64,000 bases of DNA from Saccostrea echinata (GCF_033153115.1 NW_026889803.1:62124001-62188000), one strand, 5' to 3'; numbered from the stretch's first letter, positions 52,238-52,864 are shown. Notes: generated by a model not told the origin, from the sequence alone. Program-made: numbers and translations.

Positions 52238-52864
52238 TGTAACGTGAAGTGGTCACCCATCCAAGGGTTATACAGGCTCGCCGTTGCCACTTGCCTGAAA
52301 TAGAGGGAGACTCTATTGCATTACTAGAAAAACTAGCTCACTAGCAAGGCAGTATAAGTTCCCTGTATAGTGTATACTTTCCCCTACATTTCTCCCCACT
52401 CAGCGAAGTTAAACATGGGTTCTCTCTTAGTGTCTGGGGCCTCTTCAGCAACGGCAACCAATGCCGTCCATGGACATTAAGTCATTATATGGGCACAAAG
52501 TCCTTCCCCTAGAGCTTCCTAAAGCAGGCGTTGAACTTCTTCAGTTACGGTAACTTCTGCCGTCCACAAACACCAAGTCTGTACATGGACACAAATTCCT
52601 AGCTCTAGCCCAGAAGCAGGCCGCCAGACATGAGAGTCACTACCCTGCCACCAATTTTGTAATGTGAAGCGGTCACCCATCCCAAGGTTATACAGGCCCA
52701 CCATTGCTTAACTTGCCTGAAATAGAGGGAAACTCTATCGCATCACTAGAAAAGCTAGCTCACTAGCGAACAGTATATAGTGAACTTGTACTGCCTCACT
52801 AGTGAGCTAGCTTTTCTAGTGATGCAGTAGAGTCTCCCTCTATGGGTGACCGCTTCACGCTACA
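52238..52864 (-). mobile_element. TRIM (miniature LTR retrotransposon) with 5S rRNA-derived LTRs, plus an inverted partial LTR
   Basis: Minus strand: partial 5' LTR (~52770-52658) ending TTACA, PBS TGGTGGCAGGGT (52653-52642), 269-bp internal region, PPT AGTGGGGAGAAA (52400-52389), 3' LTR TGTAGGGG...GTTACA (52388-52238, 151 bp); LTRs contain AAGTTAAGCAA..GGGCCTG..TTGG(G)ATGGGTGACCGC (5S box A to box C like). Confidence 0.75.

What the first reader, a model, noticed from the sequence alone, without database searches (positions are those of the whole stretch)
52238..52864. Cassandra-like TRIM in a bivalve: LTRs carry a 5S rRNA-derived Pol III control region
Seen on the minus strand: two ~150-bp direct repeats with LTR termini (TGTA...TTACA). 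A TGG-starting PBS 4 nt after the first (TGGTGGCAGGGT) resembles the complement of a tRNA-Leu 3' end, a PPT abuts the second, and only 269 non-coding nt lie between them. Each LTR holds ~50 nt matching the 5S rRNA internal control region (e.g. GCAACGGCGAGCCTG..CTTGGATGGGTGACC). Established: plant Cassandra TRIMs carry 5S sequence in their LTRs; as far as I recall, animal 5S-TRIMs are reported only from nemerteans (Ajax). Inference: a Pol III-driven non-autonomous LTR element mobilised by a Leu-primed Gypsy partner, possibly an undescribed molluscan lineage. It lies ~400 bp upstream of the SLC35C1-like ATG.
Basis: partly seen in the sequence, partly recalled or inferred. Interest (0 to 1): 0.82.

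Follow-up and report, generated by a model that had tools for sequence, protein, structure and literature searches.

The report
Bivalve miniature LTR element with 5S promoter
This is an old, rearranged copy of a small gene-less LTR retrotransposon whose repeats carry the internal promoter of 5S rRNA, a design known from plants (Cassandra) and two ribbon worms (Ajax) but not found described for molluscs in the literature searched.

Summary
Window 52238-52864 (minus strand) is one decayed copy of a dispersed family of about 575 bp. The family layout is a roughly 146-nt LTR (starts TGTAGCG, ends CGTTACA), a 4-nt spacer, an 11-nt primer-binding site, a roughly 280-nt non-coding interior, a purine tract and a second LTR.

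- **Primer site:** it matches perfectly the 3' end (with CCA) of this genome's own tRNA-Leu(AAG/TAG).
- **Target-site duplication:** 4 bp, perfect in 6 of 14 independent insertions.
- **5S content:** columns 90-137 of every LTR align to positions 49-94 of the genome's own 5S rRNA (box A, intermediate element, box C). The best copies match 40 of 46 positions without gaps; z = 9-22 against shuffles.
- **Rfam:** the 5S covariance model finds nothing, because only the promoter third of 5S is present.

It is a 5'-truncated LTR joined head-to-head to an inverted, internally deleted LTR, which makes a 48-bp hairpin. All copies examined are old (LTR-LTR divergence 0.07-0.17).

A sister family occurs in metagenome contigs and in an oyster-labelled run. 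A Leu-primed gag-protease element with the same LTR end and spacer is a candidate helper. Pol III transcription is inferred, not shown. The element is a new member of a known kind.

The parts
52238..52388 (-). 3' LTR, 151 nt, starts TGTAG and ends GTTACA; has a 7-nt insertion near its start
   Evidence: 86% identical to the 5' LTR remnant; aligns over its whole length to LTRs of other copies.
52249..52292 (-). 5S rRNA-derived block of the 3' LTR (box A with a 2-nt deletion, intermediate element, box C)
   Evidence: local alignment to the genome's own 5S gene, z = 13.9 against shuffles.
52389..52397 (-). Polypurine tract GGGGAGAAA abutting the 3' LTR
   Evidence: Purine runs (GGGGGGAAAG, GAGAAGGGGAAG) sit at the same place in other copies and in the sister family.
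52389..52657 (-). Non-coding interior, 269 nt: AAAT spacer, primer site, two diverged 96-nt internal repeats (52442-52512 and 52538-52608, 73% alike), purine tract
   Evidence: Interior conserved at 77-84% in at least 8 other copies. No T run of 4 or more.
52643..52653 (-). Primer-binding site TGGTGGCAGGG; 10 of 11 bases match the family's TGGTGGCAGCG
   Evidence: The genome's own tRNA-Leu(AAG) and tRNA-Leu(TAG) genes end in CGCTGCCA; with CCA added this gives 11 complementary bases.
52658..52765 (-). 5' LTR remnant, LTR columns 39-146; the first 38 columns are missing
52669..52714 (-). 5S rRNA-derived block of the 5' LTR remnant (46 nt, 35 of 46 identical to own 5S positions 49-94 without gaps)
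52766..52864 (+). Inverted LTR copy, columns 5-146, with a deletion of about 42 nt that removes box A, the intermediate element and the start of box C
   Evidence: (inverted pairs I1, I3, I4).
52722..52843 (.). 48-bp hairpin (92% complementary, 26-nt loop) formed by the head-to-head LTR pieces
   Evidence: I2. It explains the sub-threshold microRNA hits in Rfam (30-36 bits against cut-offs of 65-160).
53071..54270 (+). Context only: intronless 399-aa ORF of a TPT-family nucleotide-sugar transporter; the element lies upstream and antisense
   Evidence: PF03151, E = 1.7e-17.

Best explanation
The feature is a dead, rearranged copy of a non-autonomous LTR retrotransposon (a TRIM). The 3' third of each LTR was taken from the internal promoter of a 5S rRNA gene (box A, intermediate element, box C).

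**Shown**
- The family anatomy.
- The tRNA-Leu primer site.
- The 4-bp target-site duplication.
- The 5S origin of the LTR block.
- The old age of the copies.
- A sister family in other hosts.

**Inferred life cycle**
1. An RNA starting in the 5' LTR and ending in or beyond the 3' LTR is packaged by the Gag of a Leu-primed Ty3/Gypsy-type helper. That helper shares the LTR terminus CACGTTACA, the AAAT(T) spacer and the primer site.
2. tRNA-Leu primes reverse transcription.
3. The helper's integrase inserts the copy and makes a 4-bp duplication.

**Inferred transcription (about 50%)**
- While the family was active, the 5S block worked as a type-1 Pol III promoter.
- By 5S geometry the start would fall near LTR column 42.
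- A conserved TATAT motif lies 23-29 nt upstream of that point.
- The only T4 run of the element lies at columns 51-54.

The window copy itself has no visible function today.
For: **Family structure**
- full copies on many contigs (L003, L004, L005, L008, L009, L010, L014), solo LTRs and truncated copies.

**Target-site duplication**
- Perfect 4-bp duplications: L006 AGAC, L021 ATTG, L024 TATG, L008 ATAT, L009 CATG, L003 CTAC, and metagenome copy L103 ACTT.
- Three more match 3 of 4 bases.
- Chance per site is about 1/256.

**Primer site**
- eight own-genome sites end in CCCACCGCTGCCA; seven are called tRNA-Leu(AAG or TAG) by ARAGORN.
- With CCA added this gives 11 of 11 complementarity, 4 nt after the LTR.

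**5S origin**
- all 34 LTRs scored z = 8.8-22 against the genome's own 5S gene.
- The match is 46 nt without gaps, up to 40 of 46 identical.
- The six fixed differences lie at 5S positions 62, 71, 72, 75, 76 and 77. None lies in box C.

**Sister family**
- it keeps the LTR ends, TATAT, the T4 run, box C, the primer site plus the following GTAGTGA, and the purine tract.
- the same variant motif appears in an oyster-labelled run.

**Helper candidate**
- the L061/L070 family has the same LTR end, spacer and primer site.
- L070 carries an open 497-aa frame with Retrotrans_gag, zf-CCHC and aspartyl-protease matches.
- Kojima 2024, Fig. S2 lists Gypsy-130_CGi with the same spacer and primer site.

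**Host 5S gene**
- ATAAAG at about -30 and a T7 terminator.
Against: - Rfam's 5S model gives no hit on the window or on six other copies, even at E up to 10.
- No RNA data exist for this genome in the run index, so Pol III transcription is untested.
- The T4 run at columns 51-54 lies only about 10 nt downstream of the predicted start. It should terminate Pol III unless it is read through.
- Absence of T4 runs in the interior is weak evidence: the probability of zero by chance is about 0.35, and the copies are not independent.
- Within the genome the 5S block is no better conserved than the rest of the LTR.
- Between families, box A (68%) and the intermediate element with its spacer (55%) are less conserved than columns 21-54 (88%).
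- The helper's reverse transcriptase and integrase, and its LTR start, were not seen.
- Repbase and Dfam could not be consulted.
Confidence: 0.88

Rival explanations
1. The identity is the same (a TRIM with a 5S-derived block), but the block is a passenger. Genomic RNA would then be made by Pol II from the TATAT motif at columns 13-19, or by read-through from host genes. The 5S piece would survive only because it sits in the LTR.
For: - The TATAT motif sits 23-29 nt upstream of column 42, which fits a Pol II TATA box equally well.
- The intermediate element and part of box A differ between the two families.
- An early T4 run would hinder Pol III.
- The 5S block shows no extra conservation within the genome.
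Against: - No AATAAA-type polyadenylation signal is visible in the LTR copies read.
- Box C has no fixed change against the genome's own 5S, and the box spacing is kept exactly.
- The same layout, with the 5S promoter boxes at the 3' end of the LTR 12-14 nt before the terminus, recurs in Ajax (compared by eye).
- In Cassandra the 5S part is transcribed by Pol III (as stated in PMC10886601).
Confidence: 0.4
2. The family is a true Ajax relative by descent or by horizontal transfer between lophotrochozoans, rather than an independent capture of a 5S promoter.
For: By eye, from the Ajax sequences:
- the same order of parts and a similar LTR length (154-163 nt against 146 nt);
- the 5S block in the same place;
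- a shared departure from 5S just before box C (AACC.TTGG in place of AGTACTTGG);
- a TATAT motif about 26-30 nt upstream of the 5S-equivalent start in both;
- a tRNA-Leu primer in both.
Against: - The duplication is 4 bp here and 5 bp in Ajax.
- The interior is about 280 nt here and 108-113 nt in Ajax.
- The primer site uses a different register (TGGTGGCAGCG with CCA, against TGGCAG without).
- By eye there is no similarity in the first 90 nt of the LTR or in the interior.
- The comparison could not be run computationally, because the Ajax sequences exist here only as text.
Confidence: 0.2
3. The feature is a foldback element or MITE with terminal inverted repeats, suggested by the 24-28-nt inverted ends and the 48-bp hairpin in the window.
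For: (inverted pairs I2, I3, I4). One search gives microRNA-like hairpin hits.
Against: - The inverted arrangement was seen only in the window copy. The other copies aligned carry two LTRs in direct orientation with a primer site and a purine tract.
- The Rfam hits are far below the gathering scores.
Confidence: 0.02
4. The feature is a satellite-like tandem repeat with a period of about 430 bp, a 5S pseudogene, or a 5S-derived SINE (SINE3) fragment.
For: - Pairs of units lie 402-431 bp apart.
- The 5S similarity is real.
Against: - Elements are dispersed singly over many contigs with 4-bp duplications at the outer LTR ends, and solo LTRs have their own duplications.
- The 5' 48 nt of 5S is absent (mean z = -0.8).
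- There is no A-rich or LINE-type tail.
- The 5S block lies at the 3' end of the repeat, not at the head.
Confidence: 0.02

Closest known systems
Ajax (Ajax-1_NGe, Ajax-1_LiLo; Kojima 2024, PMC10886601)
   Same: - TRIM whose LTR carries only the promoter part of 5S rRNA (box A, intermediate element, box C), placed just before the LTR's 3' terminus.
- LTR of about 150 nt with TG..CA ends.
- tRNA-Leu primer.
- The 5' half of 5S is absent and there is no 5S-like fold.
- The host is a lophotrochozoan.
   Different: - Ajax is reported only from two nemerteans.
- Its duplication is 5 bp (here 4 bp).
- Its interior is 108-113 nt (here about 280 nt with an internal 96-nt duplication).
- Its total length is 421-434 bp (here about 575 bp).
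- Its primer site is TGGCAG without CCA (here 11 nt including CCA).
- By eye there is no similarity outside the 5S block.
Cassandra (plant TRIM; Kalendar et al. 2008, as summarised in PMC10886601, PMC7215508 and PMC10946416)
   Same: - Non-autonomous LTR element with 5S-derived sequence, including the Pol III promoter boxes, in both LTRs.
- Comparable size (565-860 bp).
   Different: - Cassandra is confined to plants.
- By my recollection, not checked here, it carries a near-complete 5S-like domain that folds like 5S and has its own terminator, uses a different primer tRNA and makes 5-bp duplications.
- Its origin is certainly independent.
Animal Helenus (tRNA-carrying TRIMs; Kojima 2024)
   Same: - The same chassis: small TRIM, 4-bp duplication, Gypsy-type helpers.
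- Found in many bivalves.
- Some lophotrochozoan Helenus families share the termini TGTAGCG or TGTAGTG ... TTACA or GCTACA, and the brachiopod ones share the Leu primer site.
   Different: - The Helenus LTR carries a tRNA-like (type-2 promoter) sequence, not 5S.
- The bivalve Helenus families read in Fig. S2 (part 1 of 2) use Lys, His, Ile, Pro or Glu primers, not Leu.
biv-TRIM (Satovic et al. 2019, PMC6934838)
   Same: It is a TRIM described in bivalves and also occurs as solo repeats.
   Different: - Its terminal repeats are 202-218 bp and its interior is 77-80 bp.
- Its purine tract is GGGGAGA, and no canonical primer site was found.
- Its published primer sequences are unrelated to this family.
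- No 5S content is reported.
SINE3 (5S-derived SINEs)
   Same: They use the 5S internal promoter to drive a non-autonomous retroelement. Kojima proposes a SINE3 insertion into an LTR as the origin of Cassandra and Ajax.
   Different: - SINE3 elements have the 5S head at the 5' end and a LINE-derived tail.
- They have no LTRs, primer site or purine tract.
- No 5S-derived SINE from bivalves was found in the papers searched.

Membership tests
TRIM (terminal-repeat retrotransposon in miniature) | Two direct terminal repeats of about 100-250 bp with TG..CA ends | tested here: met
   LTRs of about 146 nt, starting TGTAGCG and ending CGTTACA, in 7 full copies besides the window.
TRIM (terminal-repeat retrotransposon in miniature) | Primer-binding site complementary to a tRNA 3' end, next to the 5' LTR | tested here: met
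   11 of 11 bases complementary to the genome's own tRNA-Leu(AAG/TAG) with CCA added, 4 nt after the LTR.
TRIM (terminal-repeat retrotransposon in miniature) | Polypurine tract abutting the 3' LTR | tested here: met
TRIM (terminal-repeat retrotransposon in miniature) | Target-site duplication of fixed length; solo LTRs present | tested here: met
   the 4-bp duplication is perfect in 6 of 14 insertions and matches 3 of 4 bases in 3 more; nine solo LTRs among the loci fetched.
TRIM (terminal-repeat retrotransposon in miniature) | Shorter than 1 kb and without coding capacity | tested here: met
   elements of 544-580 bp; only a chance 61-aa ORF in the window copy.
TRIMp3 / Ajax-type (5S promoter in the LTR) | LTR contains a 5S rRNA-derived segment with box A, intermediate element and box C | tested here: met
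   z = 9-22; 46 nt without gaps matching own 5S positions 49-94.
TRIMp3 / Ajax-type (5S promoter in the LTR) | Transcription of the element by RNA polymerase III | not testable with these tools
   no RNA run holds the stretch. This has also not been shown for Ajax (PMC10886601).
Ajax lineage proper | 5-bp target-site duplication | tested here: not met
   4 bp here. Ajax Table S2: 5 bp.
Ajax lineage proper | Sequence similarity to Ajax-1 outside the 5S block | tested here: inconclusive
   Compared only by eye from the text; none seen apart from a TATAT motif. No alignment was run because the sequences have no reference here.
Cassandra | Near-complete 5S domain in the LTR that folds like 5S | tested here: not met
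   no similarity to 5S positions 1-48; no RF00001 hit; the predicted fold is not 5S-like.
5S rRNA gene or pseudogene (RF00001) | Match to the Rfam covariance model | tested here: not met
   no match at E up to 1 or 10. True 5S genes in the same genome score 118.8 bits.
biv-TRIM | Repeats of 202-218 bp, interior of 77-80 bp, no canonical primer site | tested here: not met
   One search compared.

The most novel reading that the evidence does not exclude
This would be a Pol III-transcribed LTR retroelement lineage shared by several bivalves. Its start site (column 42, set by the 5S boxes and an upstream TATAT) would lie inside a small hairpin (columns 37-50) that is followed by the only T4 run of the element.

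- An RNA started in the 5' LTR lacks the hairpin's 5' arm and reads through the T4 run.
- In the 3' LTR the full hairpin plus T4 terminates transcription.
- This leaves a terminal redundancy (R) of about 13 nt.

This would be a Pol III counterpart of the way retroviruses ignore the 5' polyadenylation signal. In support, columns 21-54 are the part best conserved between the two families (88%). Against it, the hairpin is no more stable than shuffled sequence (z = -0.16).
Probability: 0.12. Interest if true: 0.8.

Novelty: new member of a known kind. Interest (0 to 1): 0.52.

Why it matters
LTR elements that borrow a Pol III promoter are known from one plant lineage (Cassandra) and from two ribbon-worm genomes (Ajax). 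A bivalve family with the same design would matter in three ways.

- **Generality:** its parts are conserved between at least two host groups, and it rides on the Leu-primed Gypsy chassis that is common in this genome. That would show the design is a recurring solution, not a curiosity.
- **A test system:** the sister family is abundant in an oyster-labelled sample. A host like that offers a tractable system for asking whether Pol III can make a retrotransposition-competent LTR RNA.
- **Annotation:** these LTRs scatter 5S-promoter-like sites, which are potential TFIIIA and TFIIIC binding sites, near genes. They can also be mistaken for 5S pseudogenes or, as here, for microRNA hairpins.

The window copy itself is an inert relic.

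Tried and rejected
**Tests that found nothing or were not informative**
- Rfam scans of the window region and of six other copies gave no 5S hit. They gave only sub-threshold microRNA hits caused by the window's palindrome.
- The MITE or foldback reading was rejected, because the inverted arrangement was seen only in this copy.
- Residual similarity of the LTR's first 89 nt to 5S positions 1-48: none.
- Extra conservation of the 5S block within the genome: none, as expected for neutral decay.
- Avoidance of T runs in the interior is not significant.
- Preference for insertion near tRNA genes: only 4 of 28 loci have a tRNA-like call within 1.5 kb, so there is no support.
- The hairpin before the T4 run is predicted (-5.8 kcal/mol) but is no better than shuffles.
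- The oyster-type 5S block variant is absent from this genome.
- Earlier scan notes near this place: none.

**Limits of the data**
- RNA evidence: no RNA run is listed.
- The two DNA runs hold only Logan contigs. They show related LTRs but cannot show transcript ends.
- A metagenome scan for the LTR-end-plus-primer-site pattern found nothing. A second pattern gave 23 contigs, of which 12 are real relatives and 11 are chance.
- No long ORFs lie next to the metagenome LTRs.
I did not try to read those letters any other way.

- No consensus of the element was built or saved.
- One search printed column majorities next to a conservation profile. They are not reproduced here.
- Stretches of N in the window were left alone.

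Full report
**1. What is in the window**

On the minus strand the region reads, from 5' to 3':
- 52864..52766: an LTR in the opposite orientation.
- 52765..52658: an LTR that lacks its first 38 columns.
- 52657..52654: the spacer AAAT.
- 52653..52643: TGGTGGCAGGG.
- Down to 52389: a non-coding interior that contains two diverged 96-nt repeats and ends in the purine run GGGGAGAAA (52397..52389).
- 52388..52238: a complete LTR (starts TGTAG, ends GTTACA).

The repeat finder and BLAST within the window show direct repeats of 86-93% identity between the two LTRs. They also show that 52770-52843 is complementary to both LTRs. The inverted piece covers LTR columns 5-146 but has lost about 42 nt, including box A and the intermediate element.

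The two head-to-head pieces form a 48-bp hairpin (92% complementary). That hairpin alone explains the Rfam hits to plant and animal microRNA families, which score 30-36 bits against cut-offs of 65-160.

No target-site duplication flanks this copy. The two LTRs differ by a Jukes-Cantor distance of K = 0.13.

**2. It is a real, dispersed family with TRIM anatomy**

The 3' LTR finds at least 42 places in the genome (923 Mb, 425 contigs). Several pairs lie 402-431 bp apart.

Aligning the window copy with eight others and their flanks gives sharp boundaries:
- an LTR of about 146 nt that starts TGTAGCG and ends CGTTACA;
- the spacer AAAT;
- the primer site TGGTGGCAGCG;
- an interior of about 280 nt;
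- a purine run such as GGGGGGAAAG;
- the second LTR.

Among the loci fetched there are about 10 full copies, 9 solo LTRs and 9 truncated ones.

Target-site duplications are 4 bp:
- Perfect in L006 (AGAC), L021 (ATTG), L024 (TATG), L008 (ATAT), L009 (CATG) and L003 (CTAC).
- Three of four bases match in L017, L004 and L005.
- Absent in five insertions.
- Duplicated loci (L015 = L009; L025 and L030 = L024) were counted once.
- Six perfect matches in 14 sites, at about 1/256 each, cannot be chance.

Pattern counts with up to 3 mismatches, against 0 for the reversed controls:

| Pattern | Length | Sites |
|---|---|---|
| LTR 3' end | 28 nt | 108 |
| LTR core | 36 nt | 68 |
| LTR-to-primer-site junction | 36 nt | 16 |

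The family is therefore low-copy here. Distances between the two LTRs of a copy are 0.07-0.17, so every copy examined is old. I give no age in years because no substitution rate is known for this host.

**3. The primer site**

[quoted passage not shown] ARAGORN calls seven of them tRNA-Leu(AAG) or tRNA-Leu(TAG), each ending in CCCACCGCTGCCA. With the added CCA, the last 11 nt are exactly complementary to TGGTGGCAGCG. This stretch covers the CCA, the discriminator base and the whole 3' strand of the acceptor stem. Complementarity stops there.

**4. The 5S content**

The genome's 5S genes form an array on C1 with a period of about 1571 bp. One gene was read from L031.

- Local alignment of that gene to 34 LTR copies scored 33-62, against shuffle means of about 14.6 and shuffle maxima of 29 or less. 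That gives z = 8.8-22 for every copy (mononucleotide shuffles).
- The aligned part is 5S positions 49-94, equal to LTR columns 90-137.
- By the classical Xenopus numbering (established knowledge), this covers box A (50-64), the intermediate element (67-72) and box C (80-97).
- In 17 copies the match is ungapped over 46 nt, with up to 40 identities.
- The six family-wide differences lie at 5S positions 62, 71, 72, 75, 76 and 77. None lies in box C, and the spacing of the boxes is unchanged.
- The LTR upstream of the block shows no similarity to 5S positions 1-48 (mean z = -0.8).
- Rfam's 5S model finds nothing, either on the window or on six other copies.

So only the promoter third of 5S is present, as described for Ajax.

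**5. Relatives in other hosts**

No run of this species with RNA is indexed. Two DNA runs share a few words. Laying their contigs at 80% likeness or better gave these results:
- Hundreds of contigs lie on the LTRs.
- Very few lie on the interior, and none lie on the 5' flank.
- In the oyster-labelled run, the loose ends continue into a variant box A (GCAAGTTAAGCCAAAGCGAGC).
- They also show LTR starts TGTAGCG preceded by purine runs.

A metagenome scan for the LTR start returned 23 contigs. Twelve of them (accession sets OBLZ01 and OCZB01) carry the same variant family. Aligned with a copy from this genome, they keep:
- the LTR start;
- CAGTATAT;
- the core around the T4 run, almost unchanged;
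- box C;
- the end ACGTTACA;
- the spacer;
- the primer site plus the following GTAGTGA;
- the purine tract.

L103 is a solo LTR with a perfect ACTT duplication.

Identity between the two families, by region:

| Region | Identity |
|---|---|
| Columns 21-54 | 88-89% |
| Box C | 81% |
| Box A | 68% |
| Intermediate element plus spacer | 55% |
| 9 nt before box A | 49% |

The variant block is absent from this genome. I did not verify independently that the window's genome is a bivalve's.

**6. Candidate helper**

The 16-nt full complement of tRNA-Leu occurs 161 times in the genome. In the 30 loci read, many distinct LTRs end in CG(T/C)TACA a few bases before it.

Two loci of one family (L061, L070) end in CACGTTACA followed by AAATT and the primer site. 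That gives 25 nt at 92% identity to the TRIM junction. In L070 a frame stays open for 497 aa with Retrotrans_gag, zf-CCHC and aspartyl-protease matches. That combination is typical of Ty3/Gypsy elements, which is an inference from the Pfam families.

The reverse transcriptase, the integrase and the LTR start were not seen, because no more genome letters could be fetched. Kojima's Figure S2 lists an oyster Gypsy (Gypsy-130_CGi) with the same spacer and primer site.

**7. How it most likely works**

- **Shown:** the structure, the primer, the duplication length and the 5S origin.
- **Inferred with good support:** mobilisation in trans by a Leu-primed Gypsy-type element that recognises the shared LTR termini.
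- **Inferred with about even odds:** the 5S block served as a type-1 Pol III promoter.

Geometry that fits the Pol III reading:
- The 5S-equivalent +1 falls at column 42.
- A TATAT motif kept in both families lies at -29 to -23.
- The host 5S gene has ATAAAG at about -30.
- By eye, Ajax-1_LiLo has TATAT at about -30 to -26.

The only T4 run of the element sits at columns 51-54, just after a 5-bp hairpin. This raises the idea given in the section on the most novel reading, but the hairpin is statistically unremarkable.

Against a Pol III role:
- The early T4 run.
- The weak conservation of the intermediate element between families.
- The absence of any RNA data.

The window copy is truncated, inverted-duplicated and 13% diverged, so it is a relic. 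It lies antisense, about 200 bp upstream of the transporter ORF and about 400 bp from its conserved part.

**8. Comparison with what is known**

- The published bivalve TRIM, biv-TRIM, is a different family.
- Cassandra is confined to plants, and its origin is independent of this family. By my recollection, not checked here, it carries a near-complete 5S domain.
- Ajax is the closest analogue in design. It differs in duplication length, interior, primer register and, by eye, in all sequence outside the 5S block.
- Animal Helenus elements share the chassis (4-bp duplication, Gypsy helpers, similar termini in some families) but carry a tRNA-like sequence.
- Kojima's search for 5S-carrying TRIMs was not systematic: one nemertean was screened and one relative checked.
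- Later papers still list Ajax as the only animal case.
- No 5S-derived SINE or TRIM from molluscs turned up.
- Repbase and Dfam could not be consulted.

**9. Verdict**

The element is a new member of the known class of TRIMs with a Pol III promoter, apparently the first from Mollusca. Interest is moderate: it is a solid, publishable addition that the field had predicted, not a new kind of element.

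Noticed in passing
window 50636-50724 and 51905-51993: An 89-nt inverted repeat, 97% complementary, with arms 1180 nt apart. Short ORFs at 50412-50720 (-) and 51876-52082 (+) share a peptide. These are probably the terminal inverted repeats of a DNA transposon or MITE next to the TRIM.
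   Followed up: no
window 52131-52192: The stretch just 3' of the TRIM is a very high-copy repeat in run X1 (summed word depth about 22,000). It was not identified.
   Followed up: no
window 51500-51563: A 10-bp tandem repeat (TTTGGGTCCA, about six units).
   Followed up: no
G000: C3:4399125, C3:4409479, C5:323870, C9:49394545/49407190/49423990, C14:2294357 and six more: Thirteen dispersed sites carry an identical 28-nt variant of the LTR end, and about 82% of the LTR. Each occurs singly, and some lie 10-17 kb apart. They may be a young subfamily or an LTR piece carried inside a larger repeat. They could not be fetched.
   Followed up: partly
G000: C33:38.45-38.88 Mb, plus C28, C69, C82, C87, C94: At least 15 sites carry another box-C-plus-LTR-end variant (ending GCACGTTGCA). 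They are clustered at 23-70 kb spacing on C33. Their nature is unknown.
   Followed up: no
G000: C1:36.04-36.11 Mb (L031-L036): A 5S rDNA array of at least 47 identical genes with a period of about 1571 bp. Each gene has ATAAAG at about -30 and a T7 terminator.
   Followed up: partly
L014:1081-1100: The start of this copy's 5' LTR is replaced by a stretch containing CTACGGCCAT. This is a 10-nt identity to the 5' end of 5S rRNA. Chance is not excluded.
   Followed up: no
L061-L090: The genome holds 161 exact 16-nt tRNA-Leu primer sites. They belong to many distinct LTR families whose LTRs end in CG(T/C)TACA, which points to a large Leu-primed clade.
   Followed up: partly
same genome, another piece (scan note s1-817838): An earlier first-stage note reports a Helenus-type TRIM with a tRNA cloverleaf in its LTRs elsewhere in this genome. 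It was not checked here.
   Followed up: no
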